The notes beneath the pieces are model-generated. The model was not told where the DNA came from, did not search any database, and worked only from the letters and a program-made list of their open reading frames with translations. A stretch of 64,000 nt of DNA. It comes from Octopus sinensis. Taxonomy: Eukaryota. This document shows positions 2,716 through 64,000 of this stretch, piece by piece. The position numbers were made by a program, and so were the translations under genes. Within the stretch, counting starts at the first letter, position 1, and every line of letters begins with the position of its first letter. The DNA is taken from NCBI RefSeq assembly GCF_006345805.1, contig NC_043019.1:124001-188000 (forward strand), in the 5' to 3' direction.

Positions 2716-5575
2716 CCACGACGTCTACACATTTCTCACCTTGAACTTTCAACCTTGAACTTGTTCGCATAAACTGTCCCGTTTGTTGTATTTTTATTTT
2801 CTCTTATATTACCACTTTTTTTTACATTCATTTCATGCTTTCCACATTTTCCTGCATTTTTGTTCTCCTTTCCGTCTTTCTTCCCTCTCTGGATGTCCAT
2901 ACTCCGTTTCCTCTGCCTGCACCCCCCTTTTTTGCCTCCCCCTCTCTCTGCTTCCCTTCTTTCTTTCCCTTTTCTGTTTGCCCCGTCTTTTCTGCCCCTA
3001 TCGCTTACTTATCTAGTTTTTTCATACGATTATTATTTTTTTGTTTTTCTGAACGTTTGTTTTTCCCCTTTTTTCGCTATCCTTTTTTTCTATTGTTTTC
3101 ATACGATAATATTTGTTTTTTGTTTTTTTTCGAACGTTTTTTTCCGCTATCCCATCATGCCGGATCCTAGGTCCTACCTCCTCACCCTCCATCACCGTTT
3201 GAAGGATCATCTCCGTTCGCTCCCTGTATATTGCCTTCAGCCGTCCGTTAATCTCTCTCTACTTCTTTTTAAAAAAACCGCTTCGCTAGCCAAGTCTCTT
3301 TCCTAAGCCGCTGCATACATCACCGACTCATCCCTAAAGGTTTCCGCCTCCACTTCCACCCTGCTCTCCACTCGGATTCTTCCATCTTACCCATACTCCG
3401 CACCACATCTTACCGCCTTATGCGGGCCACCATTCGCTCCAATCTCTCCAAACTACATGCCATCAACCGCCTTCTTCCTCCTGCTTTCTCCACTTCTTCT
3501 CCTCTCTGCCGCCTCTCTATGCTCCAAACACGCTACGCTTCATTATCCATTTGAATCAACTCTTCCATCAATTTCTTTCTGATACCAAACTTCGTAAACT
3601 CCAATCACTCTTTCATTCCACCCTACCCGACGCCACTACCCCAACTCCTCCACCACCCTTCTCCCCTCCCGATAGGCTCCATCCACCCACACCTAACCCC
3701 ACTGCCCCTTCCTACAACCCCTTCTCCCCTCCCGATAGGCTCCATCCACCTACACCTAACCCTACTGCCCCGCCCAACCACCCCCACACACCTCCCCAAT
3801 CCCTCCCCCTCAGACCTCCACGAGACCTACCACCCCTCCTACTTCTATTCCACCCACCCCTTCTCCACTTCCGTCTGTTGTTACCATTCCCCCCGATCTT
3901 CCCCTCTCTGCGGCTGAACGCTCCGTCCTTGGTAGGGGTCTGCGTTTCATCCCCCTCACTCCATCCTGTAAGGAATTCCAGACGCGAGTTGATGTCCACA
4001 GCTTTGTGCGCCGTGTCCGGTTGGGTGCGCATTACCACGACTCGCCACCCACACCCAACGAAGAGGACTGCTTCACTGACCTGGGCCGCCGACCATCCCC
4101 GTGGACGCCTGCCCCTGGCCAGATCCTAGCAGTGGATCTTTTCGCGGGCGCTTGTCAGCGTGCATTGGAGCGGTTCAACTTCTCCAGGCACCAACGCCGC
4201 CTCAACATCTCCCCGGCTGAGCTCTTGGCTCTTCGTTCCCTCCAACGGCGCGCTGACATTATCATCAAACCGGCTGACAAGGGTGGAGCTGTAGTGGTGT
4301 GGCGCGCGGACCTCTATAGGGCCGAGGCTTTCCGCCAACTCAATGACACCTCCTTCTATTCCCCTCTGCCCTCTAACCCCACACTTGGCTACCAACAGAC
4401 GGTATCCTCTACTGTCCACGACCTCATCTCGTCCTCCCGTCTCCCCCACACCGCATCCAACCTAATTGTGCGAACCCCACGTACCCCCACCATTTACTTC
4501 CTCCCCAAAATCCACAAACCCAACAACCCTGGCCGCCCCATCGTCTCAGCCTGTAACTGCCCCACGGAGCTCATCTCTAAATACCTCGACCGTGTCCTTG
4601 CCCCCCTAGTGGCATCTCTTCCCTCCCACATCCACGATACCAACCATGCTCTCCGGCTTTTCAACTCTTTCTCCTTTCCTCCCGGCTCCTCCAAAATCCT
4701 TTTTACTATGGACATCCAAAGCCTCTATAATGTTATCCCTCGCCACGAAGGACTGCAGGCACTTCGACACTTTCTTGACCTCCGCTCTAACCCTGTACCT
4801 GACATCTCCACACTCATTCGTCTGGCCGAACTTGTCCTTACTCTGAACTGCTTCTCGTTCGCGGGCGAGTTCTACCATCAGGTCTCGGGAGTGGCCATGG
4901 GAACGCGAATGGGCCCCAACTATGCGAACCTGTTCGTTGGCTATGTTGAGGCCCAAATATTCTCTAATTTCACTGGTCCCACTCCTGAACTATATGGTCG
5001 TTACATTGACGACATTATCGGTGCCACCTCACTCTCCCGCGAACATCTAGATTCCTTCCTCTCTTTCGTCCAATCTTTCCATCTAGCCCTCCACTTCACT
5101 TCCACTATCTCCAACACCTCTGTCTCCTTCCTCGACATTTCGGTTAGCATTCTTCACTCCAATCTTACCACCTCCATTCACTACAAACACACAGACTCAC
5201 ACTCATACCTCAACTTCTCTTCCTCCCATCCAGAACACACCAAGCTTTCCATCCCCTATTCCCAATTCCTCCGTCTACATAGGCTCTGTAGTGACGACCA
5301 TGACTTTGAGACTCAGTCTCAACGTATGGCTCACCACTTCACCCTACGTGGATACCCCCTCACCACTATCCACACTGCCCTTGCCAGAGCACGGTCCGTG
5401 GACCGTGTATCTGCTCTCTCTCCCCGAACCCGCCCTGTAGTCTCCCGCCTCCCTTTTCCCCTCACTTACCACCCCACGACCCTACGTCTCCAACGCACCA
5501 TTCTTCGAGCTTTCCGTCATCTCCAGTCCGACCCGTCCACTTCACACCTCTTCCCTAACCGACCCCTCCCCTCTT
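2716..5575 (+). mobile_element. Penelope-like retroelement, near full-length 5' part, truncated after RT
   Basis: Frameshifted N-terminal coding (RLIPKGF motif near 3320), RT ORF 4006-5577, C-rich sense strand. Confidence 0.9.
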
Positions 5576-5577
5576 GA
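4006..5577 (+). CDS. Penelope-type reverse transcriptase (truncated; ORF start is not an ATG)
   Basis: IIIKPADKGGAVVVW, LPKIHK...PGRPIVS, DIQSLY, GVAMGTRMGP and YGRYIDD motifs. Confidence 0.9.
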   Translation: MRRVRLGAHYHDSPPTPNEEDCFTDLGRRPSPWTPAPGQILAVDLFAGACQRALERFNFSRHQRRLNISPAELLALRSLQRRADIIIKPADKGGAVVVWRADLYRAEAFRQLNDTSFYSPLPSNPTLGYQQTVSSTVHDLISSSRLPHTASNLIVRTPRTPTIYFLPKIHKPNNPGRPIVSACNCPTELISKYLDRVLAPLVASLPSHIHDTNHALRLFNSFSFPPGSSKILFTMDIQSLYNVIPRHEGLQALRHFLDLRSNPVPDISTLIRLAELVLTLNCFSFAGEFYHQVSGVAMGTRMGPNYANLFVGYVEAQIFSNFTGPTPELYGRYIDDIIGATSLSREHLDSFLSFVQSFHLALHFTSTISNTSVSFLDISVSILHSNLTTSIHYKHTDSHSYLNFSSSHPEHTKLSIPYSQFLRLHRLCSDDHDFETQSQRMAHHFTLRGYPLTTIHTALARARSVDRVSALSPRTRPVVSRLPFPLTYHPTTLRLQRTILRAFRHLQSDPSTSHLFPNRPLPS

Positions 5578-5634
5578 AGACGGGAAGGATTGCTTCCCTT
5601 CGCAAATACTGATAGGGCACAGAAAGTGTGTGTG

Positions 5635-5745: not shown

Positions 5746-5782
<37 letters not shown>

Positions 5783-6053
5783 GATAAATCTCAGAGCGAG
5801 TATATGTATTTGTGAAGGGAACCGACTTCTCATCGACAACTATGATTGTCACACGCCGATGACGGGTCAATACTCTGAAACTCGAGTCCGTGTGTATCAT
5901 AAGTTGAAGACTGGAAGGATGGCTTCCCTTCGCAAGTACTGATAGGGCACATAATGTGTGTCTATAGCCAGCTGGAGGAGGTATCCTCCTGGGGCTACAA
6001 ACTACAGTAGCATCCACCCTTAGGGGTTAGCCATATTCAAATGGCAAATATAC

Positions 6054-6055
<2 letters not shown>
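5574..6055 (+). mobile_element. Retrozyme-like hammerhead repeat (partial copy, microsatellite, second copy); uninterrupted allele of the Tx1 target
   Basis: ttgaagac...cttcccttcgcaa..actgatagggcaca at ~5574 and again at ~5904. Homologous to 56333-56615, 61945-62176 and 30400-30640. Confidence 0.75.
5850..5894 (+). ncRNA. Minimal type I hammerhead (core U4C variant, GUC site)
   Basis: cacacg-CCGATGA-cgggt caat actct-GAAA-ctcgag-TC-cgtgtg; stem III is the palindrome CTCGAG. Confidence 0.75.
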
Positions 6056-6095
<40 letters not shown>

Positions 6096-6440: not shown

Positions 6441-8718
6441 TGTTATCCCTCACCACGAAGGACTGCAGGCACTTCGACACTTTCTTGACCTCCGCTCTAA
6501 CCCTGTACCTGACATCTCCACACCCATTCGTCTGGCCGAACTTGTCCTTACTCTGAACTGCTTCTCGTTCGCGAGCGAGTTCTACCATCAGGTCTCGGGA
6601 GTGGCCATGGGAACGCGAATGGGCCCCAACTATGCGAACCTGTTCGTTGGCTATGTTGAGGCCCAAATATTCTCTAATTTCACTGGTCCCACTCCTGAAC
6701 TATATGGTCGTTACATTGACGACATTATCGGTGCCACCTCACTCTCCCGCGAACATCTAGATTCCTTCCTCTCTTTCGTCCAATCTTTCCATCTAGCCCT
6801 CCACTTCACTTCCACTATCTCCAACACCTCTGTCTCCTTCCTCGACATTTCGGTTAGCATTCTTCACTCCAATCTTACCACCTCCATTCACTACAAACAC
6901 ACAGACTCACACTCATACCTCAACTTCTCTTCCTCCCACCCAGAACACACCAAGCTTTCCATCCCCTATTCCCAATTCCTCCGTCTACATAGGCTCTGTA
7001 GTGACGACCATGACTTTGAGACTCAGTCTCAACGTATGGCTCACCACTTCACCCTACGTGGATACCCCCTCACCACTATCCACACTGCCCTTGCCAGAGC
7101 ACGGTCCGTGGACCGTGTATCTGCTCTCTCTCCCCGAACCCGCCCTGTAGTCTCCCGCCTCCCTTTTCCCCTCACTTACCACCCCACGACCCTACGTCTC
7201 CAACGCACCATTCTTCGAGCTTTCCGTCATCTCCAGTCCGACCCGTCCACTTCACACCTCTTCCCTAACCGACCCCTCCCCTCTTTCAAACGAGCCCACA
7301 ACCTTCGAGACCTTTTGGTCCATAGCTCCTTCCCTGACCCTACCTCCCAACCCGGCTCGTTCCCCTGCTCCCACCCACGTTGCCGCACTTGCCCTTACCT
7401 CTCCAACACCACCCGCCTCACTAGCACCCACCATCGACCCTATCCCATCATCCACTCCTTCACCTGCACCTCCAGCAATATTATCTATTGCATCTCTTGC
7501 TCTCTCTGCAATTCCTTGTACATCGGACAAACGGGACGCCGCTTGGCTGACCGGTTCGCGGAACACCTTCGTGACATCCACCTTGCGAACGACACACCGG
7601 TCTCACGTCATTTCCGCTCCACCGGTCACTCCTTGCAACACCTATCTGTGTTCGGTTTGTCCTTACACAGAGGCCATCCGGATTCCCGTTTGCGCCGTGA
7701 ACAGGAATTAATCTTCTCTCTTCGCTCTTATACGCCATTTGGTCTCAACTCTCCCCCCCCCTCATCTAACCCCCCTCTCCCCCCTCCTCACCTATCCTTT
7801 CCCCCCGACCCCTACTTCTTCAGTCCTTCATCCTTTCACCCCTCCTCCCCTTCCCTTCTTCCCTCTTTCTCCCTCCCTCCTTCCCTCTGCTCCCTCACTC
7901 CCTCACTCCCCTTCTCTCTCCCCCTCTCCATCTTTCCTCCTTCCTCCCCTCCTTCCTCCCCCTCCTTCATCCCCCTTCTCCCCCTCCACCCCATCCCCTC
8001 TTCTTCCCCTCCCCTTCTCTCCCCCTCCTCTCTTCTCCTCACTACACCACACGACTTTACACATCACATCATATATGATGTGCCATACTAATACATACAC
8101 CAACTAATACATACTAATACATACACCAACTAATACATACTAATACATACTAATACATACACCAACCCTATACATACACACGTCCAGACCCCTCATACGC
8201 ACTTATACTCTCTCATACACACACACACACTTATACATACTAATACGTACTAATACATACTAATACATACACCAACCCCATACATACGCACGTCCAGACC
8301 AATCCTACGCACTAATACTCTCTCATACACACACACTCACACACTTATACATACTAATACATATACCAACCCTATACATACACACGTCCAGACCCCTCCT
8401 ACGCACTATTAGCTGGTCCTTCAACCCTATTATCAACCCTATTATCTCCCCTTATTTCGCTCTCGCGTCTCATGTTTGATCTTTGACCTCTGGCCGAAAT
8501 CAGATCGCCATGTTGATTCGTTAGATACTGCACGCATTTTTTTTCTCTCCTTCTTTCTGTGTTTTTTTTCTCTCTGTGTATCTTTCTGTTGAAGAGCGTA
8601 GGCTCGAAACGTTAAAGACTTGTTTTATTTATATTTCCTGAGCGCCATACTAATACAATTGTTCGTTTGTTTTCCACCTGCCTTCGTCTTTTGTCTATTT
8701 TCATAAAGCTTCCCGTTA
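6441..8718 (+). mobile_element. Penelope-like element 3' part (duplicated RT segment, GIY-YIG endonuclease, 3' tail)
   Basis: 6441-7285 repeats 4731-5575 with ~4 substitutions, then continues into the endonuclease, a polypyrimidine tract, (ctaatacata)n repeats and the tail. Confidence 0.9.
6601..8091 (+). CDS. Penelope RT C-terminus plus GIY-YIG endonuclease (last ~100 aa are low-complexity read-through)
   Basis: YGRYIDD; CSHPRCRTC; IIYCISCSLCNSLYIGQTGRRLADRFAEH; RREQELIFSL. Confidence 0.85.
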   Translation: MAMGTRMGPNYANLFVGYVEAQIFSNFTGPTPELYGRYIDDIIGATSLSREHLDSFLSFVQSFHLALHFTSTISNTSVSFLDISVSILHSNLTTSIHYKHTDSHSYLNFSSSHPEHTKLSIPYSQFLRLHRLCSDDHDFETQSQRMAHHFTLRGYPLTTIHTALARARSVDRVSALSPRTRPVVSRLPFPLTYHPTTLRLQRTILRAFRHLQSDPSTSHLFPNRPLPSFKRAHNLRDLLVHSSFPDPTSQPGSFPCSHPRCRTCPYLSNTTRLTSTHHRPYPIIHSFTCTSSNIIYCISCSLCNSLYIGQTGRRLADRFAEHLRDIHLANDTPVSRHFRSTGHSLQHLSVFGLSLHRGHPDSRLRREQELIFSLRSYTPFGLNSPPPSSNPPLPPPHLSFPPDPYFFSPSSFHPSSPSLLPSFSLPPSLCSLTPSLPFSLPLSIFPPSSPPSSPSFIPLLPLHPIPSSSPPLLSPSSLLLTTPHDFTHHIIYDVPY

Positions 8719-8741
8719 TATATATATATATATATATATAC

Positions 8742-8966
8742 ACAAAATAAAAATAAATAATAAACATATAAAAAATATAAAATTATATACATATTATTTG
8801 TTATTTATGTATTGGTTTATGTCTATCACTGTTTGAGTTGCATAATAGTTGTTTTATCTCTAATTCATATTTTATACACACACACACACAGACATATATA
8901 TATATGTATGTGTGTGTATTAGACATGGCCTGGACCAATCTTTGGTCGAAACATATCTAAGTTTTA
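8742..8966. repeat. ~230-270-bp AT-rich repeat 'unit A' flanked by (TA)n
   Basis: Reverse-complement copies at 55397-55665, 56071-56312 and 63609-63832. Confidence 0.8.
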
Positions 8967-8987
8967 CATATATATATATATATATAT

Positions 8988-10056
8988 TGTTATGGTTTGG
9001 CTAGTGCAGTATTTCTTGACCCACTTTTGGGAGTGGCGCCGGCACGTCTGGAAGAAAAGCAACAGCCCTTTGTTTACTGGAAGAGTAATGGCTTTTTGGA
9101 GGGACCTTTTGGCCTTGTGCGGTCGATTGGGGGTCAGAGAGATGTGAGGGCCGAAGAAGAGGAAGAATCTAGCAGTAGTGAGAAAGATAGAGTAAGGGAT
9201 CTGAGAGCTGTCATGAGAGAATGACAGCAGCAGCGCGGTAGAGTTAGGCAGTTAAGGCTGAGAGCAGATAGAGAGGGTATAAGCAGTAGAGACAGATGGA
9301 GGGGTAGTGATAGAGGGTCAGTTGGTATTCGGTCGTCAAAGAGAGCAGTCGGATTTTGGTCGTCAGAGCAAGTAGTTGGCGGTTTTGGAGCATTGGGACA
9401 GAAGGAGATATATACAGAGAGATAGGCGGCCGTTGGAGAGGAACTACAATATGGGACACTGGCAATTCTAATTAGGAATTAAGGTACGTGAATTGTGTAT
9501 TGATATGTGTAGAAAAAGAAGGACAAGGAATCGAAATGAACAGTGAAAAGAAATGAGACAGTGAAAAGAACATTGTGAATTGAGAAAAGGACTTGTCGAT
9601 GTGTCGATTATCGAGTTGTGGTATTTATGTTCAGAATTGTGTTGATACATGTTGCAAAAGAAAATAGAAAAAGACTTTAAAGAACTGTGAACGTTATCTG
9701 TGATGTGTTTTGAAATAGAACTGTGTCTTCGGACGTGTACCTTTGAAATGCTGATATATTGACCTTGTTGTGTCGTTACCGGACGGTTATATTGTTATTT
9801 GCATGTTTAAATGCTTTGATCTGTTGTATACCTGTATTGATTTGTTGTTTCCTTTAAATGCTTTGATGTTGTAACCATTGATTGTCATAAACTAGTTGTT
9901 AAATGTAAGCCAGTTGTTGCCTTGCCGTTTTGTGTCTCTCTCGGTTGCCTCTCTGTATCTCTCTGTGTTGCTGCTGTTGTTGTGTAGGGTATCTCTCCTC
10001 TTTGGGTTCCGTGGCGAACTTGCCCGTTCGGGCGAGCGGCGACGGGTGATTCCGTA

Positions 10057-10059
<3 letters not shown>
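8988..10059 (+). mobile_element. Probable solo LTR (~1.07 kb) inserted in (TA)n
   Basis: Begins TGTTAT and ends ...ccGTAAAA, one change from GTAACA; no ORF; (TA)n on both sides; mirror copy at 62516-63587. Confidence 0.5.
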
Positions 10060-10117
<58 letters not shown>

Positions 10118-10145
10118 TATGCTCGCAAGTACGTGTGTATGTATG

Positions 10146-10285
<140 letters not shown>

Positions 10286-10404
10286 CATCTCTCTCTCTCT
10301 ATATATATATATACATACATACACATAAATATATACATATATATATATGCATATATACACATACATCTATCTATGTATATATATAAATATATATATATAT
10401 ATAT

Positions 10405-10634
10405 CGTGACGCATATTTGTCATTTGAATATGGCTTACCCATAAGGTTGGATGCTACTGTAGTTTGTAGCCCCAGGAAGATATCTCCTCCAGCTGGCTAT
10501 AGACACACTATCTGTGTCCTTTCAGTATTTGTGAAGGGGAGTCATCCCCCCCGTCTTCAACACATGATACACACGTACCCGAGTTTCAAGGTGTTTACCT
10601 TTCATCAGCGTGTGACAATCATGGTTGTCGACGA
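10405..10634 (-). mobile_element. Retrozyme-like hammerhead repeat, 3' flank of the minus-strand Tx1 copy
   Basis: Exact reverse complement of 61945-62176. Confidence 0.75.
10570..10614 (-). ncRNA. Minimal type I hammerhead ribozyme
   Basis: Reverse complement of 61965-62009. Confidence 0.8.
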
Positions 10635-13084
10635 ATTTCTTTACTACGATTATAAAATCATTACATAGAAGGACAATACAGGACATACATACAAAAAACA
10701 GTTAAGTGGTTCGATTAAAAATTTTCCATAACATTTGGATTATTCATTATACAAAATTTGTATTTAAATTGTCCTTTGCATGACCAATAGAACATTACAA
10801 CATTACATTAAATTGCGATCTTACCGATTTTTAAACCCCGGCAACCTATAAGGCCCCGCAGCTTTTCTTTCCTCTCCTCCATCCATAGTTAAGCTGGGTT
10901 TCTGACACCCACCTTTTTTGCCACTTCCTTCCATCTTTTTTCATACACACCTCGTGTTAAGATCTTTTCCAGCCCCATTTTGCTCTTCAGATGATATCTG
11001 AAGTAAGTGAGCAAGCCGGGGCCTGAGACAAAGGATCCTATTGCGACTCCTTCCATTCTTGTACGCCACATGCATTCTTTTACTACTGCAACCGTGCAGT
11101 GAAAACATGCCTCATCTGCCTTCGAGAGTCCAGTTGGCGGTATCATCTTAATCATAGACTCAGCCGACAACTGTACTCGTCCCAGATGCGATAACACGTG
11201 TTCTGCGTAACTTATCCAGTCTGACAACTTCCGACAGTGTACAAAAGCGTGCTGGACGGTTTCATCGTCCAACCCGCATCTTGGACACGTCGGTGGCACT
11301 GAAATTCCGTGCCGCGATAACTTCTCGCGAACAGGTAAAGCATTCCTATAACACTGCCAGGCCAGGGATCTTTGGAAATTATCCAAATACCCCGTCCTGA
11401 AAGTCTTTTTAAACAGGTTGGTAAGCTGGTCTTCGTCAAACCCCAGAGCCCCTCCTAGGACGTCGTCGTTCTTTGCCTCTACCAGCCTGCTATAAAATAC
11501 CGAGGTGGTATTTCCGCAGCCGGCCTTGCCCGCCTTGTGGATCAGCGTGAGTGCCTGTCGGCACTCCTTTTGCCATAAAGTCAGATTCCGTCTTTTGATG
11601 CAACCGGGTTTAAAATTCACTAAGGAAGCCGGTCTCGGGAAAAATTCCCCTGCCAGCGGACTCCACACCTTATCACCCTCCAGTGGTGCCAGAGATGCTT
11701 CAGCCTCAACGTATGTCTGCGCATCATCAACCAAGGCATTCCTAACCCACCCTTTAACGGTTCCTGGCAGCAAACGGAGCGCCTCACAAGTGGCTTTCCT
11801 CCCTTCCACAAAAAGCGGAAAAGGATTCGCTCCAACTTGCTAAGCCATGAATCGGGGCAAGGGACAACGGTCAGGCGGTAGGTGATTACAGATGCAATGA
11901 ACATCTGTACCACCTCCGCCCTTCCTTTCAAGGACAGAAACCTTCCGGACCAGGTCCGTACTATGGCCTCCACCTTGCCCGTCACCTCACTCCAATTCCT
12001 CTCCGTTTGGGAGTCTGACCCAAACCAAACTCCTAGCAACTTAACAGGACCATCCGTCCAGTGTCCCACGACACTGGACGATATCGACTTGCTCCTCCAG
12101 GTGCCGAGGCGCAAGCCAACCGACTTGTCCTTGTTAACCCTTGCTCCTGCCACCGCCTCGTATCCTCTGATAGCATCTTCTACACAAGGTAGCTGGGCCT
12201 CATTGGACACGATGAGGGTGACGTCATCCGCATAAGCAGTAACCGTCCTCCCACCTCCGATCTCATCCGGGTTACTTCCCAGCCTCTCCAAATTTCGCAG
12301 CAATGGCTCGAGAGCCAACACGTACAAAAGTGGTGACAAGGGGCACCCTTGACGAACTGAACATTCGATCGAAAACGGTTCTGTTAGGTAACCGTTTATC
12401 TGGACGGTGGACTTGATGCCGCTATACATAGCGGAGATCCACCCGCGAAATTCAGGGCCCAGTCCAGCCGCTTCGAGGACCGTCACCAGGTACTTATGGT
12501 CTACCCTATCGAACGCTTTACTTTGGTCTAAATGGACCATTACCCCGCCCTTGCCGGTTAATTTACCCACTCTATCTAAGGTGTAGTGTATAAGGTGAAG
12601 ATTATCCTGGATCGACCTGCCTGGAATTGCACATGTCTGTGCTTTCCCTACAAGTTTCTCCACGACAATCGTCAACCTTTTTGCCAACACCTTGGCCAAA
12701 ATCTTTAACTCTACATTAAGTAGAGTTATGGGCCTGTAATTACTAATGTTATCCCCCTTGCTCGGGTCTTTCTGGATTAGCGTCACCACTCCCCGGCTTA
12801 CAGAACTGGGAATTCTCCCATTCTGCTGCCAGTTCGTGTAGACGCCTGCCAATATTCCCCCGAACAAGTCCGGCATACTTTGGTAAAACTCGTAGGGCAG
12901 ACCATCCAACCCCGGCGACTTCTCCCCGGCGCATCCGGCCAGTATCCCCTCTATCTCCGCGGGAGTGATCGCTTCTTCACAGCACTCCACCTCACGCCCC
13001 GAGAGCCGCGGTCCGCTGGCTAGGAAGTCCTTTAAGGCCCTCCCCCGCTCCGGCGCCACACCACCCCCGAACGCGCGGGCGAAA
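10635..13084 (-). mobile_element. Tx1-clade LINE, 3' 2.45 kb (RT plus C-terminal zinc finger), cut by the assembly gap
   Basis: ORFs 11620-13059 and 10889-11809 match the translations at 59.5-61.7 kb; coordinates sum to 72579 throughout. Confidence 0.9.
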
Positions 13085-45105: not shown

Positions 45106-45149
<44 letters not shown>

Positions 45150-52842: not shown

Positions 52843-53636
52843 TACATGGTGGCTGCCCCCTCGTTATCGAGTATGGCCATTGCTCGAAAATTAATCAATG
52901 TTGTTATCGTGCAATGCCTGTGCAAGACGATTTTTTTAAGTGGGGAAAGGCTGTGCACTGAGTCAATCCCATTCACTAAGCAACAGCAGCCGTAATCTGA
53001 AAAGAAGAACAAATCAACATCATCGGTAACCACTGAGCCGCAGGTTTTATGTCGGAGTTATCCCAGTTACCTGAATTACCTTCTCCTAGAAGGACGCCCT
53101 AACAAAGGCTAGGAGTCCTTCACTCCCAATGGTTTAACCGCGCGATCAGGTATTCAGCCCGATTATTTCAATGTCCCCGCACATGATCCCGCCTTAAGAC
53201 ATTTACTGGATGGCCGTTGACTCTCAAGAGTTCCTCCTCCCTTTGACAGGTTTTGTTTTTCATCCCGCAGGGTGTCCAATAAACACCCTCCTCATCAAGC
53301 AAGCTTGGTGGGGTTGCCGGTTTAGTCGCCGATGACCCGACCATGCAACAGGTTGTACATACATACATACGCACCACCAGTTTTCTGATTCAGTAGTTTC
53401 GTCTGACATTTTAAATCAGGACAAACATTCTTAAAATGTTCGAAGCAAACAGAAAACAAAGAATCAGGTTCGAATTTCATTGTTTCATAACCAAATAGGA
53501 TAGCAGATTGCTTAAGGCGATACTATAACGAATGACCTCACTATGACAACGTAACTGATATGTCAGGTTTTGTAGTACAGTTGACATAATGGATTTAACC
53601 CAGTTTTTTTTCCCTTACTCCCTCCTTAAATATATA
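52843..53636 (-). mobile_element. Second copy of the RTE-like non-autonomous element
   Basis: Reverse complement of 752-1540. Confidence 0.6.
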
Positions 53637-53644
53637 TTTATTAT

Positions 53645-54050
53645 TCTTTCTCTTTTACTCTTTTCTTGTTTCAGTCATTTGACTGTGGCCATGCTGGAGC
53701 ACCGCCTTTAATCGAGCAAATCAATCCCAGGACTTATTCTTTGTAAACCTAGTACTTATTCTATCGGTCTCTTTTGCAGAATCGTTAAGTTACGGGGACA
53801 TAAACACACCAAAATCGGTTGTCAAGTGATGTTGGGGGAACAAACACAGACACACAAGTATAAACACACACACACTCACACACATATATATATATATACA
53901 TACAACGGACTTCTTTCTGTTTCCTTCTACCAAATCCACTCACAAGGCTCTGGTCGGCCCGAGGCTAGCGCAGAAGACTCGCCCAAAGTGCCACGCAGTG
54001 GGACTGAACCCAGAACCATGTGGTTGGTAAGCAAGCTAATTACCACACAT
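53645..54050 (-). mobile_element. Composite SINE
   Basis: Same family; shares ggttctggg and accagagcc variants with 302-735. Confidence 0.75.
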
Positions 54051-54420: not shown

Positions 54421-54434
54421 GAAACCTGCATACT

Positions 54435-54684
54435 CTTACTCTTTACTCTTTTATTTGTTTCAGTCATTTGATTGCGGCCATGCTGGAGCACCGCCATTAG
54501 TCGAGAAAATCGACCCCAGGACTTATTCTTTGTAAGCCCAGTACTTATTCTATCGTACATATTTGCCGAACCGCTACGTTACGGGGACGTAAACACACCA
54601 GCATCGGTTGTCTAGCAATGCTAGGGAGACAAACACAGACACACAAACATAAACAGACAAACACACACACACTTTATATATATA

Positions 54685-54775
<91 letters not shown>

Positions 54776-54950
54776 CATACATATATACGACGGACTTCTT
54801 TCAGTTTCAGTCTACCAAATCCACTCACAATGCTTTCGTCGGCCAGAGGCTACAGTAAAGCACACTTGCCCAAGATGCTACGCAGTGGGACTGAACCCGG
54901 AACCATGTGGTTCGTAAGCCAAGCTACTTACCACACAGCCACTCCTGCGC
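54435..54950 (-). mobile_element. Composite SINE
   Basis: Same family. Confidence 0.8.
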
Positions 54951-55454: not shown

Positions 55455-55507
<53 letters not shown>

Positions 55508-55661
55508 TATATATATGTCTGTGTGTGTGTGTATAAAATATGAATTAGAGATAAAACAACTATTATGCAACTCAAACAGTGATAGCCATAAACCAATAGA
55601 TAAATAACAAATAATATATATATAATTTATATTTTTATATGTTTATTATTTATTTTTATTT

Positions 55662-55701
<40 letters not shown>

Positions 55702-56038: not shown

Positions 56039-56070
<32 letters not shown>

Positions 56071-56312
56071 GTAAAACTTAGATAAAACTTAGATATGTTT
56101 CGACCAAAGATTGGTCCAGGCCATGTCTAATACACACACACACACATACATATATATATATGTCTGTGTGTGTGTGTGTATAAAATATGAATTAGAGATA
56201 AAACAACTATTATGCAACTCAAACAGTGATAGACATAAACCAATAGATAAATAACAAATAATATATATATAATTTTATATTTTTTATATGTTTATTATTT
56301 ATTTTTATTTTG
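55397..56312. repeat. Unit A - compound microsatellite cassette - unit A
   Basis: gtaaaacttagata...ttttattttg at 55397-55665 and 56071-56312. Confidence 0.85.
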
Positions 56313-56332
56313 TATATATATATATATATATA

Positions 56333-56615
56333 ATGACTCCCCTTCACAAATACTGAGAGGACACAGATAGTGTGTCTATAGCCAGCTGGAGGAGATATCT
56401 TCCTGGGGCTACAAACTACAGTAGCATCCACCCTTATGGGTAAGCCATATTTAAATGGCAAATATGCGTCACGATGTGTTACCGCTACTGTTTATAACTC
56501 GCTCTGAGATTTATCATTGTTTGATTTCACTTTTTCAATATCAGTATCAATCGACACTGGAAAAAGTATATGTATTTGTGAAGGGACCTGACTTCTCGTC
56601 GACAACTATGATTGT
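56333..56615 (+). mobile_element. Retrozyme-like repeat, 5' flank of Tx1 (ends in the TSD at 56596-56615)
   Basis: 56333-56475 is a direct repeat of 62034-62176. Confidence 0.75.
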
Positions 56616-56842
56616 TATTCGTCTAGGGACCCCTCTTTCATCTGCGTTTTGAGAATTTTGCTGCCTTCTCGTTGAGTGAGTTCGTATTTTTTGTTCGTTG
56701 TTGTTTATGTTACTTGTGAATTGAACAGTTGTCCGTTGTGTAACAGTAATTTTCGCCCCACGGGGCAGAAAATTCTGTGTTTAAACATTGTCATTACCTT
56801 CGAGGTAATTTTTTTGAAACATTTGTTCTCATAATTTGAGAA

Positions 56843-58277
56843 ATGGATTTCGACTTGGCGTCGAAGAGTGACTTTCCCGTGATGGGAAAAGGTGAACAAA
56901 AGGATACCGAAGTAAAAAAACAGTCTTTTTCGGCCGCAGTGGGCGGAACCGTAACGGATGTAGAATTTAAGATTGAACAGTTATTCGAATACCGGAACTT
57001 GGTAAAAACGGAAGGAAATGAAATTAAACTGGTACCGCCGCAAGCGAAGGTACAGGAAATAAAGGCAAAGACAGTTATATACAAAGTTTATAGCAATAAA
57101 GAAAAAAAATAATGGATGTCAAGAACGAGATAGTAGAAAAGTGCTTGTCCCCGGTGTGGGACAAAATTCGCCACGTTGTTCGAGGTGCTCGCAGCGCTAC
57201 CGTTGAAGCACATTTCGACTCGGCTGATGTGGCAAGAGAGGTGTCATCAATGACCTTGAAAAGTGAGGATATCATGTTGCTACCCTCGTATATGGGGAAA
57301 AGAACAGCCAAACTACATGTAGAGGATATACCAAGAGGGTATGACATAACGTGGGTAGCAGCGGCAGTCCTGCACAACGTAGAGCGGGAAGTTTCAATTC
57401 TGCAGATGAGAAGGAAAGAGGAGGTGCACTGGAAAGGACAAACGCTAGAACTCCTCGTTCAAGCAGAAAATAAGATACTAGAAAACTTACCCGATAGGGT
57501 ATTTAATGAGGAGGGAACTTCAATGAGAGTGTCAGTGGAGGGGTGCAGACCTAGGTGCTTCAAATGTGGCGAAAAGGGTCATGTCCGCTCAAACTGCATA
57601 AAAAAAAGAAAATCAACGAAGCCCCTCCTCAAAGTGCTTCAAACACTGAAAAAGAAAAGGCGGAAAAAGAACCCAAGACTGCGACAAGGAAAGGAACCGA
57701 AACAGAAGATGAAAATGAACAAATGGACTTTACACAGGTGACACACAAAAGAAAAAAAGATAACACCCTGGACTCCCCTCCCCAAACAAAGAAAAAATCA
57801 GCAAACACCGCAGAGATACATAAAAAACAAATTCCCCAGCCCTACCCCCACGGCACTGTATTCATTGGAACACAGTTCGCCAAGCCCCTCCCCATAAAAC
57901 AAGATTTGAAAAAATTGATAAAAAAAAATGAAAAAATTATAGCATTTGACGAGAAGAACGATAGGGTGTACAAGTATTTCAAATTTTCAAAATTTAAACT
58001 ATTCAGTAAGTCTACAGACACAAAATCAACCACTCGCTTTGCGAAAATAAAGGAAGACGAGTGGAAGGAAAAAACACTACAAGAACATTTAAAGAATAAT
58101 CTCATCAGAGATGTAACGAATGAAATAATGGAGGGTAAACTCATTATAACCCCGGCAACCACACCTACCCAGAGCCCGATGGCAACGCCGGTTAAGAGCC
58201 CTGCAGCTACGACCACAAGGGAGGAAGAAGGGGAAGCAGGCAGATTTAAACTGTCATGCTTCTTGTCCCAACCGTAA
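56843..58277 (+). CDS. Tx1 ORF1 (CCHC zinc knuckle), two apparent 1-nt deletions in A8 runs
   Basis: CFKCGEKGHVRSNC; the frames join if one A is added at ~57102-57109 and at ~57600-57607. Confidence 0.8.
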
Positions 58278-58304
58278 GTTTGTTTATTTTTTCTCTCTCC
58301 GACA

Positions 58305-61300
58305 ATGGCAAAGCTGGGTTGTGTAAATGTGCGTGGAATGGGGTCGAAATGGAAACAAATTTGTTTCCTGAACGACCTCACGACACACGGAGTGGACGTA
58401 GCTATTGTAACCGAGTCCAAGATGAACGGGGCCCAAGCGTTCTCGCCTCTTCTAAATGGTTTCGAGAAATTTATTTCTCCTAGCCGAGGAAGAGGAAGAG
58501 GCGTGGCAGTCCTTATCAGGAAGAGCTTGGACTTGCAGGTAAGTACTGTCTTTCTGGACCCAGGAGGCAGGCTGGTCGTTCTGGATGTGACCCACGTAAG
58601 TAAACAGTCCCTCGGGTTGGTAGCTGTCTACGCTCCGAATGAGTGTAGGCAGGCGGGTTTTTTTCGGAATCTGGAGCCCTTTCTAGCGACGTCGAAAACG
58701 GTAGTCTTAGTAGGGGACTTTAACACTATCCTTGAAGCGCGGGTCGACAGTTTTGGCTCAACCAATAGGAAGGGGAACCCTAGCCTCAAGGGTCTACTAG
58801 AGAGCTTTGATCTAGTGGACCGTTATCGACTGGATGAGCCGAGCGTTCCACAGTGGACGTGGAGTAACAACGACGGCTCACACAGATCGTATATAGATAG
58901 GATATTCGTTAGGAAAAGAGATAAGGATACGTTTAGTTGTCCACAGTTTCACATTGTGCCTTACACGGATCACAAATTTGTGACTTGTAGGGTGCAATTA
59001 GATAAGTGCCATAGACAGGGACCCGGGTACTGGAAGCTGAACAAGTCTATTTTGAATTGTGAAGACTTCCGTACCCGGATTAAGGTGTTAGTACAGAGGG
59101 CATTGTGTGGCACCATCATTAACAATAGATGGTGGCACTCCCTCAAAAGAGCCATTCGTTCAGAGTCCATTAGATTTAGCAATCAGCTAAGATTAGATAG
59201 GTCTAGGATAGAGGACTATTTAGTTAAGAATCTAAACGAGGCAATGGAAGCTGGCTCTGCATCCGGAGTGATGGCGGCAAGGACGGTATTGTACCGTCAC
59301 CTTAACTCCAAACACGAAGGTTGCAGAGTTAGAGCTAAGCTACGCGCTGGGAAACGAGAAGGTATTAACGTTGCCGGATGGGCCCGTCGAGTGGAGAGTC
59401 AGAGAGGTAACAAAGCTTCAATCAAGTCTTTAACTGACGAACAGGGACAAAAGATCTACGGACAGGAGGAGATGCAAAAGTTTCTTCACCAGCATTTCGC
59501 CCGCGCGTTCGGGGGTGGTGTGGCGCCGGAGCGGGGGAGGGCCTTAAAGGACTTCCTAGCCAGCGGACCGCGGCTCTCGGGGCGTGAGGTGGAGTGCTGT
59601 GAAGAAGCGATCACTCCCGCGGAGATAGAGGGGATACTGGCCGGATGCGCCGGGGAGAAGTCGCCGGGGTTGGATGGTCTGCCCTACGAGTTTTACCAAA
59701 GTATGCCGGACTTGTTCGGGGGAATATTGGCAGGCGTCTACACGAACTGGCAGCAGAATGGGAGAATTCCCAGTTCTGTAAGCCGGGGAGTGGTGACGCT
59801 AATCCAGAAAGACCCGAGCAAGGGGGATAACATTAGTAATTACAGGCCCATAACTCTACTTAATGTAGAGTTAAAGATTTTGGCCAAGGTGTTGGCAAAA
59901 AGGTTGACGATTGTCGTGGAGAAACTTGTAGGGAAAGCACAGACATGTGCAATTCCAGGCAGGTCGATCCAGGATAATCTTCACCTTATACACTACACCT
60001 TAGATAGAGTGGGTAAATTAACCGGCAAGGGCGGGGTAATGGTCCATTTAGACCAAAGTAAAGCGTTCGATAGGGTAGACCATAAGTACCTGGTGACGGT
60101 CCTCGAAGCGGCTGGACTGGGCCCTGAATTTCGCGGGTGGATCTCCGCTATGTATAGCGGCATCAAGTCCACCGTCCAGATAAACGGTTACCTAACAGAA
60201 CCGTTTTCGATCGAATGTTCAGTTCGTCAAGGGTGCCCCTTGTCACCACTTTTGTACGTGTTGGCTCTCGAGCCATTGCTGCGAAATTTGGAGAGGCTGG
60301 GAAGTAACCCGGATGAGATCGGAGGTGGGAGGACGGTTACTGCTTATGCGGATGACGTCACCCTCATCGTGTCCAATGAGGCCCAGCTACCTTGTGTAGA
60401 AGATGCTATCAGAGGATACGAGGCGGTGGCAGGAGCAAGGGTTAACAAGGACAAGTCGGTTGGCTTGCGCCTCGGCACCTGGAGGAGCAAGTCGATATCG
60501 TCCAGTGTCGTGGGACACTGGACGGATGGTCCTGTTAAGTTGCTAGGAGTTTGGTTTGGGTCAGACTCCCAAACGGAGAGGAATTGGAGTGAGGTGACGG
60601 GCAAGGTGGAGGCCATAGTACGGACCTGGTCCGGAAGGTTTCTGTCCTTGAAAGGAAGGGCGGAGGTGGTACAGATGTTCATTGCATCTGTAATCACCTA
60701 CCGCCTGACCGTTGTCCCTTGCCCCGATTCATGGCTTAGCAAGTTGGAGCGAATCCTTTTCCGCTTTTTGTGGAAGGGAGGAAAGCCACTTGTGAGGCGC
60801 TCCGTTTGCTGCCAGGAACCGTTAAAGGGTGGGTTAGGAATGCCTTGGTTGATGATGCGCAGACATACGTTGAGGCTGAAGCATCTCTGGCACCACTGGA
60901 GGGTGATAAGGTGTGGAGTCCGCTGGCAGGGGAATTTTTCCCGAGACCGGCTTCCTTAGTGAATTTTAAACCCGGTTGCATCAAAAGACGGAATCTGACT
61001 TTATGGCAAAAGGAGTGCCGACAGGCACTCACGCTGATCCACAAGGCGGGCAAGGCCGGCTGCGGAAATACCACCTCGGTATTTTATAGCAGGCTGGTAG
61101 AGGCAAAGAACGACGACGTCCTAGGAGGGGCTCTGGGGTTTGACGAAGACCAGCTTACCAACCTGTTTAAAAAGACTTTCAGGACGGGGTATTTGGATAA
61201 TTTCCAAAGATCCCTGGCCTGGCAGTGTTATAGGAATGCTTTACCTGTTCGCGAGAAGTTATCGCGGCACGGAATTTCAGTGCCACCGACGTGTCCAAGA

Positions 61301-61690
61301 TGCGGGTTGGACGATGAAACCGTCCAGCACGCTTTTGTACACTGTCGGAAGTTGTCAGACTGGATAAGTTACGCAGAACACGTGTTATCGCATCTGGGAC
61401 GAGTACAGTTGTCGGCTGAGTCTATGATTAAGATGATACCGCCAACTGGACTCTCGAAGGCAGATGAGGCATGTTTTCACTGCACGGTTGCAGTAGTAAA
61501 AGAATGCATGTGGCGTACAAGAATGGAAGGAGTCGCAATAGGATCCTTTGTCTCAGGCCCCGGCTTGCTCACTTACTTCAGATATCATCTGAAGAGCAAA
61601 ATGGGGCTGGAAAAGATCTTAACACGAGGTGTGTATGAAAAAAGATGGAAGGAAGTGGCAAAAAAGGTGGGTGTCAGAAACCCAGCTTAA
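58305..61690 (+). CDS. Tx1 ORF2: APE endonuclease, RT and C-terminal zinc finger; one frameshift near 60890
   Basis: NVRG, VTES, VYAPN, VGDFN, YIDRIF, TDHK; PGLDG, YRPITLLN, LDQSKAFDRV, VRQGCPLSPLLY, AYADD; CPRCG...ETVQHAFVHC. Confidence 0.92.
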
Positions 61691-61964
61691 CTATGGATGG
61701 AGGAGAGGAAAGAAAAGCTGCGGGGCCTTATAGGTTGCCGGGGTTTAAAAATCGGTAAGATCGCAATTTAATGTAATGTTGTAATGTTCTATTGGTCATG
61801 CAAAGGACAATTTAAATACAAATTTTGTATAATGAATAATCCAAATGTTATGGAAAATTTTTAATCGAACCACTTAACTGTTTTTTGTATGTATGTCCTG
61901 TATTGTCCTTCTATGTAATGATTTTATAATCGTAGTAAAGAAATTCGTCGACAACCATGATTGT

Positions 61965-62009
61965 CACACGCTGATGAAAGGTAAACACCTTGAAACTCGG
62001 GTACGTGTG
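61965..62009 (+). ncRNA. Minimal type I hammerhead directly after the 3' TSD
   Basis: cacacg-CTGATGA-aaggt aaac acctt-GAAA-ctcggg-TA-cgtgtg; canonical core; predicted cleavage after 62003. Confidence 0.85.
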
Positions 62010-62289
62010 TATCATGTGTTGAAGACGGGGGGGATGACTCCCCTTCACAAATACTGAAAGGACACAGATAGTGTGTCTATAGCCAGCTGGAGGAGATATC
62101 TTCCTGGGGCTACAAACTACAGTAGCATCCAACCTTATGGGTAAGCCATATTCAAATGACAAATATGCGTCACGATATATATATATATATTTATATATAT
62201 ACATAGATAGATGTATGTGTATATATGCATATATATATATGTATATATTTATGTGTATGTATGTATATATATATAGAGAGAGAGAGATG

Positions 62290-62429
<140 letters not shown>

Positions 62430-62457
62430 CATACATACACACGTACTTGCGAGCATA

Positions 62458-62515
<58 letters not shown>

Positions 62516-62518
<3 letters not shown>

Positions 62519-63587
62519 TACGGAATCACCCGTCGCCGCTCGCCCGAACGGGCAAGTTCGCCACGGAACCCAAAGAGGAGAGATACCCTACACAACAACA
62601 GCAGCAACACAGAGAGATACAGAGAGGCAACCGAGAGAGACACAAAACGGCAAGGCAACAACTGGCTTACATTTAACAACTAGTTTATGACAATCAATGG
62701 TTACAACATCAAAGCATTTAAAGGAAACAACAAATCAATACAGGTATACAACAGATCAAAGCATTTAAACATGCAAATAACAATATAACCGTCCGGTAAC
62801 GACACAACAAGGTCAATATATCAGCATTTCAAAGGTACACGTCCGAAGACACAGTTCTATTTCAAAACACATCACAGATAACGTTCACAGTTCTTTAAAG
62901 TCTTTTTCTATTTTCTTTTGCAACATGTATCAACACAATTCTGAACATAAATACCACAACTCGATAATCGACACATCGACAAGTCCTTTTCTCAATTCAC
63001 AATGTTCTTTTCACTGTCTCATTTCTTTTCACTGTTCATTTCGATTCCTTGTCCTTCTTTTTCTACACATATCAATACACAATTCACGTACCTTAATTCC
63101 TAATTAGAATTGCCAGTGTCCCATATTGTAGTTCCTCTCCAACGGCCGCCTATCTCTCTGTATATATCTCCTTCTGTCCCAATGCTCCAAAACCGCCAAC
63201 TACTTGCTCTGACGACCAAAATCCGACTGCTCTCTTTGACGACCGAATACCAACTGACCCTCTATCACTACCCCTCCATCTGTCTCTACTGCTTATACCC
63301 TCTCTATCTGCTCTCAGCCTTAACTGCCTAACTCTACCGCGCTGCTGCTGTCATTCTCTCATGACAGCTCTCAGATCCCTTACTCTATCTTTCTCACTAC
63401 TGCTAGATTCTTCCTCTTCTTCGGCCCTCACATCTCTCTGACCCCCAATCGACCGCACAAGGCCAAAAGGTCCCTCCAAAAAGCCATTACTCTTCCAGTA
63501 AACAAAGGGCTGTTGCTTTTCTTCCAGACGTGCCGGCGCCACTCCCAAAAGTGGGTCAAGAAATACTGCACTAGCCAAACCATAACA
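62516..63587 (-). mobile_element. Probable solo LTR (mirror of 8988-10059)
   Basis: Reverse-complement identity. Confidence 0.5.
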
Positions 63588-63859
63588 ATATATATATATA
63601 TATATATGTAAAACTTAGATATGTTTCGACCAAAGATTGGTCCAGGCCATGTCTAATACACACACATACATATATATATATGTCTGTGTGTGTGTGTGTA
63701 TAAAATATGAATTAGAGATAAAACAACTATTATGCAACTCAAACAGTGATAGACATAAACCAATACATAAATAACAAATAATATGTATATAATTTTATAT
63801 TTTTTATATGTTTATTATTTATTTTTATTTTGTGTATATATATATATATATATATATAA

Positions 63860-64000
63860 CGGGAAGCTTTATGAAAATAGACAAAAGACGAAGGCAGGTG
63901 GAAAACAAACGAACAATTGTATTAGTATGGCGCTCAGGAAATATAAATAAAACAAGTCTTTAACGTTTCGAGCCTACGCTCTTCAACAGAAAGATACACA
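63860..64000 (-). mobile_element. 3' tail of a Penelope element running off the window edge
   Basis: Reverse complement of 8575-8718. Confidence 0.75.

What the first reader, a model, noticed from the sequence alone, without database searches (positions are those of the whole stretch)
56596..62009. Tx1-clade LINE inserted directly 5' of a hammerhead ribozyme, with the empty site present in the same window
Seen: the 5.3-kb LINE is flanked by TCGTCGACAAC(T/C)ATGATTGT at 56596-56615 and 61945-61964. The 3' copy abuts stem I (CACACG) of a canonical hammerhead at 61965-62009. An uninterrupted homolog has TCATCGACAACTATGATTGT (5830-5849) running straight into its hammerhead (5850-5894). Established: many Tx1-clade elements are sequence-specific and target rRNA, snRNA, tRNA and miRNA genes, microsatellites or other transposons. 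Inference: this family may target a ribozyme-bearing repeat, a target class I do not recall being described. Only one independent insertion is visible, because the minus-strand copy is a mirror duplicate.
Basis: partly seen in the sequence, partly recalled or inferred. Interest (0 to 1): 0.9.

Follow-up and report, generated by a model that had tools for sequence, protein, structure and literature searches.

The report
LINE nested in a hammerhead retrozyme repeat
A 5.3-kb L1/Tx1-type jumping gene really has landed inside a small hammerhead-ribozyme repeat of an octopod genome, but only one insertion can be seen and related elements sit elsewhere, so deliberate targeting of ribozyme repeats is unproven and this is most likely an ordinary nested transposon.

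Summary
A 5,329-bp LINE (56616-61944) with APE endonuclease, reverse transcriptase and zf-RVT domains is flanked by a 20-bp target-site duplication (TSD). The 3' copy abuts a hammerhead motif (61965-62009). A paralogous unit (5780-6056) is uninterrupted at that point. The minus-strand copy is the same locus assembled twice, with no substitutions in 4.5 kb and an N gap at its end.

The host repeat looks like a metazoan non-LTR retrozyme. Its reconstructed monomer is 352 nt, 42% GC and strongly self-paired (z = -5.9). Copies are 5'-truncated 1.4-mers ending in (AT)n, and Penelope-like elements lie beside one of them. The TSD is the 5' strand of the ribozyme's extended helix I, so the ribozyme downstream of the LINE stays complete.

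Targeting is not supported. No second copy of this family could be retrieved. The LINE's 3' tail is shared with tRNA-derived SINEs in this window and with LINE relatives in Octopus sinensis and Argonauta hians. Their seven 3' junctions have unrelated flanks, and none is beside a hammerhead. One post-hoc lead remains: the O. sinensis relative shares TTGTCACA at the same offset (p about 0.002).

Verdict: a real nested insertion, with specificity untested and modest interest.

The parts
56333..56475 (+). Upstream, 5'-truncated retrozyme monomer. It holds only the part 3' of the ribozyme, is preceded by (AT)n, and ends ...GCGTCACGAT.
   Evidence: 97.2% identical to 62034-62176; alignment A1.
56476..56595 (+). 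Linker and 5' arm of the retrozyme monomer that was hit by the LINE.
   Evidence: 56565-56615 matches 5799-5849 at 94%. 56493-56518 is present in reverse complement at 5780-5804 of the paralog, so this stretch belongs to the element. It pairs within the monomer fold.
56596..56615 (+). 5' copy of the 20-bp target-site duplication, TCGTCGACAACTATGATTGT.
56616..61944 (+). L1-group (L1-Tx1-type) LINE of 5,329 bp. It has no poly(A) tail and ends ...GTAGTAAAGAAAT.
   Evidence: ORFs and Pfam domains. Best solved-structure match is human L1 ORF2p, E = 7.8e-66. Boundaries come from alignment to the paralog.
57112..58277 (+). ORF1 region, split between two reading frames (57112-57741 with the CCHC knuckle; 57555-58277). 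A further 89-aa ORF at 56843-57112 may be its N-terminus in a third frame.
   Evidence: The Argonauta hians relative matches ORF1 residues 35-173 at L125 2314-2742, upstream of its ORF2.
58305..60959 (+). ORF2, main part: APE endonuclease (about 58377-58973) and reverse transcriptase (about 59826-60554).
   Evidence: Pfam PF03372 and PF00078.
60770..61690 (+). ORF2 C-terminal part in another frame, with zf-RVT at about 61208-61351. There is a 1-nt gap relative to the O. sinensis relative near 60892.
   Evidence: The mirror copy shows the same pair of overlapping ORFs.
61870..61944 (+). 3' tail of the LINE, homologous to the tails of tRNA-derived SINEs and of octopod LINE relatives.
   Evidence: Alignment A3.
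61945..61964 (+). 3' copy of the TSD, TCGTCGACAACCATGATTGT. In RNA it forms the 5' strand of the extended helix I.
   Evidence: The fold of 61945-62030 gives -32.5 kcal/mol, z = -4.5.
61965..62009 (+). Type I hammerhead motif. The predicted cleavage is GUA/C between 62003 and 62004, which is 59 nt past the LINE's 3' end.
   Evidence: No Rfam match.
62010..62176 (+). 3' part of the retrozyme monomer, followed by the (AT)n tract 62175-62515.
5780..6056 (+). Paralogous uninterrupted retrozyme copy. It has a 5' inversion at 5780-5804, a degraded hammerhead at 5850-5894, and an (AT)n tail.
5574..5631 (+). Retrozyme fragment joined directly to the 3'-truncated Penelope-like element (PLE) copy that ends at 5573-5575.
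8575..13084 (-). Mirror duplicate of 59495-64000 (3' half of the LINE, the retrozyme and its flank), ending at the N gap 13085-13184.
   Evidence: No substitutions and two 2-bp indels in (AT)n.

Best explanation
One copy of an L1-group (L1-Tx1-type) LINE integrated by target-primed reverse transcription into a monomer of an older mobile repeat that carries a hammerhead. That repeat is a retrozyme-like, Penelope-associated element with a monomer of about 352 nt.

The bottom-strand nick fell after ...GACTTC. The top-strand nick fell 20 bp downstream, exactly at the base of the ribozyme's inner helix I. Repair duplicated those 20 bp.

Shown here: the insertion, its boundaries, the TSD, the domain content of the LINE, the hammerhead motif, and the retrozyme-like properties of the host repeat.

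Inferred: that this is a nested insertion with no demonstrated family-level preference for ribozyme repeats. The adjacency to the ribozyme would then be a consequence of where the staggered cuts fell, not of ribozyme recognition.
For: - Junctions and TSD.
- LINE domains.
- The host repeat occurs at two loci and makes up about 1.4% of the non-redundant window, so a chance hit is not far-fetched.
- The reconstructed monomer is 352 nt and 42% GC, and folds as a circle at -111 kcal/mol with z = -5.9. These values lie in the range described for metazoan non-LTR retrozymes (PMC7229834).
- Both complete copies end in (AT)n, which is the preferred target reported for Neptune and Naiad PLEs (PMC8557442).
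- The LINE's 3' tail is homologous to SINE tails in this window and to LINE relatives in O. sinensis and A. hians. The seven 3' junctions have unrelated flanks.
- One SINE has a perfect 15-bp TSD in unique AT-rich DNA.
- No hammerhead motif lies in the relatives' loci scanned with the descriptor, L001-L004. The retrozyme unit has no BLAST match in L001-L004.
Against: Many Tx1-clade families have sharp target preferences for repeats, including other transposons and satellites (PMC4494074). The only visible copy of this family does sit in a repeat, in the same orientation as the ribozyme.

The O. sinensis relative also sits in a repeat, a 31-bp satellite. Its 3' flank shares ACCAnnnTTGTCACAnG with this one at the same offset (8-mer p about 0.002; 15 of 30 matches, p about 0.009; both post hoc).

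The SINEs whose flanks are unrelated have tails closer to the O. sinensis-type LINE than to this family. They may therefore be moved by a different enzyme.
Confidence: 0.55

Rival explanations
1. The family is sequence-specific, like other Tx1 elements. Its endonuclease recognises a DNA motif in the retrozyme's helix-I region (roughly CTTC-N16-TTGTCAC, or ACCAYGATTGTCACA). Copies would then accumulate 5' of hammerheads, with the motif and not the ribozyme as the determinant.
For: - The clade is known for target preference (PMC4494074).
- The TSD is long and precise at 20 bp, and there is no poly(A) tail.
- The O. sinensis relative, which has the same ...TAAAGAAAT terminus, sits in a 31-bp satellite whose unit holds CTTC and TTGTCAC at the same 16-nt spacing. 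TTGTCACA lies 17-18 nt from the LINE's end in both elements.
- ACCANNNTTGTCACA occurs in this window only in the retrozyme copies: 3 matches against 0.47 expected.
Against: There is one insertion for this family and one for the O. sinensis relative. The motif was found post hoc. The TSD lengths differ (20 bp versus 6-7 bp). The A. hians relative and all SINE junctions lack the motif.
Confidence: 0.28
2. The association is functional. The LINE homes into transcribed retrozyme arrays and uses the resident hammerhead to trim read-through transcripts 59 nt past its 3' end. That leaves a target-homologous 3' extension that can pair with the nicked target during priming.
For: - The LINE and the ribozyme have the same orientation.
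- The TSD regenerates the whole extended helix I, so the downstream ribozyme is structurally complete.
- Retrozyme repeats are reported to be highly transcribed (PMC7229834).
- From general knowledge, R2 uses an HDV-like ribozyme to cut its 5' end out of the rRNA co-transcript.
Against: This is purely structural inference from one copy. The upstream monomer lacks a ribozyme. Helix III has only 2 bp and the 10.1-11.1 pair is A-U, so activity as a monomer may be low. Rfam does not recognise the motif. There are no expression data.
Confidence: 0.07
3. The juxtaposition is an assembly artefact, with a chimeric join of LINE and retrozyme reads.
For: The window contains an inverted, essentially identical duplicate ending at an N gap. 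This region was therefore difficult to assemble.
Against: Both junctions are present. They carry a matching 20-bp TSD that reconstitutes the paralog's contiguous sequence exactly. The 3' junction is reproduced in the second assembled copy.
Confidence: 0.03

Closest known systems
Tx1 elements that insert into other transposons or satellites (Tx1L in Tx1D; Tx1-Mar in Mariner-N4_AMi; PMC4494074)
   Same: An APE-type L1-group LINE without a poly(A) tail sits inside another repeated mobile element. It is in a defined orientation and has a clear TSD.
   Different: In those families tens of independent copies share the target. Here there is one copy, and relatives have other flanks. The host element would be a hammerhead retrozyme, which is not among the targets described in that paper.
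Metazoan non-LTR retrozymes (Cervera and de la Pena 2020, PMC7229834; Li et al. 2026 preprint, 10.64898/2026.07.22.740005)
   Same: A type I hammerhead with a 2-bp helix III plus tetraloop, a monomer of a few hundred nt, GC below 50%, a highly self-paired RNA, tandem or multimeric copies, and PLEs in the same genome.
   Different: Only 1.4-mers at two loci are seen. Circular RNA and self-cleavage are untested. Cephalopods were not among the species studied experimentally in that paper (a coral, a mussel and a salamander), and its main text does not mention them.
Hammerheads of Penelope-like elements (cited in PMC8557442 and PMC7229834)
   Same: Minimal type I hammerheads associated with PLEs. 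The paralog's helix III region ACUCGAGU is palindromic, as in motifs that act as dimers. The PLE copies lie immediately beside one retrozyme locus, and one is fused to it.
   Different: The retrozyme shares no detectable sequence with the PLE in this window. The PLE's own 3' region holds a different hammerhead-like motif with a mutated core (8581-8618).
R2 and other LINEs with HDV-like ribozymes at their 5' ends (general knowledge)
   Same: A LINE lies next to a self-cleaving ribozyme within a transcribed repeat.
   Different: There the ribozyme belongs to the LINE and cuts at its 5' end. Here it belongs to the target and lies 3' of the LINE, and no use of it is shown.
LINE-SINE pairs with shared 3' tails (stringent type; Kajikawa and Okada 2002, cited in PMC4494074)
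   Same: About 70 nt of the LINE's 3' tail is homologous to tRNA-derived SINE tails in the same window and in A. hians.
   Different: The middle of this LINE's tail has diverged. The SINEs match the O. sinensis-type tail better.

Membership tests
L1-group LINE (L1/Tx1) | ORF2 with an APE endonuclease followed by a reverse transcriptase | tested here: met
   PF03372 E = 2.2e-15 and PF00078 E = 1.5e-32. Human L1 ORF2p is the best PDB match over residues 7-866, E = 7.8e-66.
L1-group LINE (L1/Tx1) | C-terminal cysteine-rich (zf-RVT) domain, and an ORF1 with a CCHC knuckle | tested here: met
   PF13966 E = 4.1e-10 and PF00098 E = 1.2e-4.
Tx1 clade | RT-domain phylogeny places the element with Tx1L, Keno, Kibi and Koshi rather than with L1 proper (RTclass1-type test) | not tested
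   No reference Tx1 sequences or classifier were available. Indirect support: no poly(A) tail, and L1-Tx1 is the only L1-type class in the table of recently active TE families in O. vulgaris (PMC13282606).
Sequence-specific Tx1 family | Many independent copies share the same flanking target (more than 20% of copies in Kojima's analysis, PMC4494074) | not testable with these tools
   Only one independent copy exists in the window. No copy of the family is in the searchable collections; the best relative is 62% identical. Relatives and SINEs that share the tail have other flanks.
Hammerhead ribozyme, type I | Conserved core CUGANGA...GAAA, an A15.1-U16.1 pair, and H17 | tested here: met
   CUGAUGA at 61971-61977, GAAA at 61992-61995, A61995-U62002, and A62003. 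There were no hits in 300 shuffles.
Hammerhead ribozyme, type I | Three helices around the core, with helix I open | tested here: met
   Helix I has 6 bp plus an extension through the TSD. Helix II has 5 bp. Helix III is 2 bp plus the UCGG loop. The MFE fold shows helices I and II but pairs part of the core instead of helix III. The 10.1-11.1 pair is A-U rather than G-C.
Hammerhead ribozyme, type I | Match to the curated covariance model (Rfam) | tested here: not met
   No match at the gathering score or at E <= 10 in 64 kb, 201 nt or 59 nt.
Hammerhead ribozyme, type I | Self-cleavage | not testable with these tools
   This needs an in-vitro transcription assay.
Metazoan non-LTR retrozyme | Unit of 170-400 nt with a type I hammerhead, low GC, and a highly self-paired RNA | tested here: met
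   The monomer is 352 nt and 42% GC, with z = -5.9. It was reconstructed across the LINE, so its length is an inference.
Metazoan non-LTR retrozyme | Tandem multimeric genomic copies | tested here: inconclusive
   Two loci each hold about 1.4 units, with 5' truncation points 15 nt apart. No long array is present.
Metazoan non-LTR retrozyme | Expressed as circular RNA | not testable with these tools
   No transcript data were available.

The most novel reading that the evidence does not exclude
An octopod L1-Tx1 family homes to the helix-I DNA of a hammerhead retrozyme. Because its 20-bp TSD regenerates the complete ribozyme, it could use that target-borne hammerhead to cut read-through transcripts 59 nt beyond its 3' end. 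The resulting template would carry a target-homologous primer-binding extension. This would be the 3' counterpart of R2's 5' HDV-like ribozyme.
Probability: 0.07. Interest if true: 0.8.

Novelty: new member of a known kind. Interest (0 to 1): 0.3.

Why it matters
If the family really homed to retrozymes, it would add self-cleaving-ribozyme repeats to the list of Tx1 targets. It would also link two retroelement systems, LINEs and PLE-dependent retrozymes, that are currently discussed separately.

As it stands, the window gives three things:
- a clean example of a retrozyme-like repeat in an octopod;
- a LINE-SINE tail relationship;
- a PLE-retrozyme chimeric junction that fits the current proposal that PLEs mobilise animal retrozymes.

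The targeting claim itself rests on a single insertion.

Tried and rejected
- **Rfam.** Searches at the gathering score and at E <= 10 on 64 kb, 201 nt and 59 nt found no hammerhead. The motif was therefore validated with a structural descriptor and shuffles.
- **Metagenome scan.** A scan with the LINE's last 16 nt returned only chance matches of about 20 nt.
- **Protein searches.** Three searches found no member of the same family. The best hits were 62% identical (P0002), then 40-60%.
- **Short contigs.** L001, L126-L130, L131 and L132 end before the 3' junction or give no recognisable LINE terminus. L002 and L004 show no recognisable junction.
- **Other LINE pieces in the window.** Related fragments are at 22864-23313 (-), 41854-42030, 26053-26631 and 20267-20452. 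The only one examined for its ends, 22864-23313, is internal and gives no junction.
- **LINE mobilises the retrozyme.** Rejected, because the retrozyme has no BLAST match inside the LINE, so no shared 3' tail was detected. The retrozyme copies end in (AT)n, as PLE insertions do.
- **Retrozyme is the pLTR of the neighbouring PLE.** Rejected, because there is no sequence similarity between them.


Full report
**1. Observation**

They differ only at 56607 (T) versus 61956 (C).

Between them lies a 5,329-bp element.
- ORF1 (57112-57741) has a CCHC knuckle. It continues in another frame to 58277.
- ORF2 (58305-60959) has APE and RT domains.
- The ORF2 C-terminus with zf-RVT is in a third frame (60770-61690).
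- Human L1 ORF2p is the best solved-structure match (E = 7.8e-66).

Alignment with the paralog at 5760-6075 shows the paralog running straight through the point where the LINE starts and ends. The 20 bp are present once in the paralog.

The hammerhead motif at 61965-62009 has every core nucleotide and three helices. A structural descriptor finds it and its mirror copy only, and found nothing in 300 shuffled windows. Rfam does not recognise it at any threshold tried. The 10.1-11.1 pair is A-U. 'Canonical' therefore holds for the core, not for the curated model.

**2. The mirror copy**

The stretch 8575-13084 (-) equals 59495-64000 (+) with no substitutions. The only differences are two 2-bp indels inside (AT)n. 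The copy stops at the N run 13085-13184. This is one locus represented twice, most likely a contig placed in inverted orientation. There is therefore one insertion. The 'empty site' at 5780-6056 is a paralog at 84-86% identity, not an allele.

**3. What the host repeat is**

Upstream of the LINE lies a second, 5'-truncated copy of the part that follows the ribozyme (56333-56475, 97% identical to 62034-62176). The locus was therefore about 1.4 tandem units before the LINE arrived.

Joining 62004-62176, 56476-56615 and 61965-62003 gives a 352-nt monomer measured from cleavage site to cleavage site. It is 42% GC. Folded as a circle it reaches -111 kcal/mol, against -81 +/- 5 for shuffles (z = -5.9).

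The complete copies end at ...ACGT or ...GCGTCACGAT followed by (AT)n. The copy upstream of the LINE instead continues from ...GCGTCACGAT into the next unit. The two loci begin 15 nt apart in unit coordinates. The paralog carries a 5' inverted segment: 5780-5804 is the reverse complement of 56493-56518.

These properties match metazoan non-LTR retrozymes. Those have units of 170-400 nt, GC below 50%, self-paired RNA, and a type I hammerhead whose helix III is 2 bp plus a tetraloop (PMC7229834). The (AT)n context matches the (TA)n insertion bias reported for Neptune and Naiad PLEs (PMC8557442). [quoted passage not shown]

Two PLE copies with RT and GIY-YIG domains flank the paralogous unit.

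**4. Geometry of the insertion**

The TSD is the 5' strand of the extended helix I. The stretch 61945-62030 folds into one long hairpin with the ribozyme core at its tip (-32.5 kcal/mol, z = -4.5).

The top-strand break lies exactly between the internal loop and the inner 6-bp helix I. The bottom-strand break lies 20 bp upstream, after GACTTC. Because the 20 bp were duplicated, the ribozyme downstream of the LINE keeps its full helix I. A read-through LINE transcript would be cut 59 nt past the LINE's end if the ribozyme is active. That last step is inference only.

**5. Is the family targeted?**

No other copy of the family is in the window or in the searchable collections. The relatives that could be read give the following.
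- **O. sinensis (L003).** This is a 5'-truncated relative at 9670-11069 with the same ...TAAAGAAAT terminus and a TSD of about 6-7 bp. It is embedded in a 31-bp satellite, AGATGTTCCATCACAGTTGTCACCAGTCTTC.
- **Argonauta hians (L125).** This is a full-length relative that ends next to (ATT)n and starts right after a tandem of tRNA-derived SINEs.
- **SINEs in this window.** They lie at 1-105 (+), 17340-17107 (-) and 45694-45761 (+). They share about 70 nt of 3' tail with these LINEs (alignment A3). One has a perfect 15-bp TSD in unique AT-rich DNA.

The seven 3' junctions have unrelated flanks. The descriptor found no hammerhead in the relatives' loci L001-L004, and the retrozyme unit has no BLAST match there. 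The lineage as a whole is therefore not ribozyme-directed.

One lead remains. The window's flank and the O. sinensis flank share ACCAnnnTTGTCACAnG at the same offset. For the 8-mer p is about 0.002, and 15 of 30 matches gives p about 0.009. The satellite unit also has CTTC 16 nt before TTGTCAC, as the retrozyme does. This was noticed post hoc and rests on two insertions.

**6. Weighing**

Tx1 families often have targets, including other transposons and satellites (PMC4494074). The prior for a target preference is therefore not small. The retrozyme fills about 1.4% of this window, so a chance hit is also not rare. I put about 0.55 on an incidental nested insertion and about 0.28 on a real DNA-motif preference. 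I put about 0.07 on a functional use of the ribozyme and about 0.03 on an assembly artefact.

**7. Novelty**

LINEs nested in other repeats, Tx1 target preference, PLE hammerheads and mollusc retrozymes are all known. An octopod retrozyme-like repeat carrying an L1-Tx1 insertion is a new instance of these. My literature searches found no description of a Tx1 family that targets a hammerhead repeat. That claim remains untested here.

Noticed in passing
window 3551-5575 and 6438-8717: There are two copies of a Penelope-like element with RT and GIY-YIG domains, 99.4% identical over an 848-bp overlap (4728-5575 = 6438-7285). The first copy is cut off inside its ORF at 5573-5575 and joined, with 1-2 nt of microhomology, to retrozyme sequence. 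This looks like a template switch from retrozyme RNA to PLE RNA during reverse transcription, which would fit PLE-driven retrozyme mobilisation.
   Followed up: partly
window 8581-8618 (+); mirrored near 63957-63994 (-): The PLE's 3' region holds its own hammerhead-like motif. Helix I is UCUUU/AAAGA, helix II is GAGC/GCUC, and GAAA is followed by the palindrome AACGUU. The core reads CUGUUGA (A6 replaced by U), so it is probably inactive. It is unrelated in sequence to the retrozyme's ribozyme.
   Followed up: partly
window 1-105 (+), 17107-17340 (-), 45694-45761 (+); L125 903-1357: tRNA-derived SINEs have a 3' tail (...CTCTATGTTTAGCCCCTTGTGGNTAATAAAGAAAT) homologous to the tail of this LINE lineage, which indicates a LINE-SINE partnership in octopods. 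The copy at 17107-17340 has a perfect 15-bp TSD, TATATTTTCTATTGC. In A. hians three SINE units are in tandem, directly followed by a full-length LINE.
   Followed up: partly
L003 8057-9216 and flanks of 9670-11069 (Octopus sinensis CM016876.1): A 31-bp satellite of about 38 copies hosts a 5'-truncated relative of the LINE. Its unit shares CTTC-N16-TTGTCAC with the retrozyme target site.
   Followed up: partly
window 8575-13184 versus 59495-64000: An inverted duplicate is identical except for microsatellite length and ends at a 100-N gap. It is probably a mis-oriented or redundant contig in the assembly.
   Followed up: yes
window 303-733, 13418-13606, 20790-21132, 26953-27347, 27643-28182, 30085-30398, 38336-38761, 44949-45302, 48969-49384, 53627-54049, 54430-54950: An interspersed repeat of about 400 bp is present in a dozen copies on both strands, at 78-93% identity. 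It is the most abundant repeat in the window. It was not classified.
   Followed up: no
window 22864-23313 (-), 41854-42030 (+), 26053-26631 (+), 20267-20452 (-), 32763-34070 (-): There are fragments of other retroelements. One is an internal piece of a related LINE (54% aa identity to ORF2). The others are an ORF1-like piece, two more distant RT and APE pieces, and a 435-aa RT ORF.
   Followed up: partly
window 8723-8987 (-), 55489-55683, 56057-56332, 63588-63852: An AT-rich repeat of about 270 bp is flanked by (AT)n or (GT)n. It contains a hairpin followed by GAAAC (GGACCAAUCUUUGGUCGAAAC). It lies directly upstream of the truncated retrozyme monomer at 56333. Its nature is unknown.
   Followed up: no
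window 46787-47947 (+): A 386-aa ORF has a weak C2H2 zinc-finger match. It may be a host gene exon or another element.
   Followed up: no
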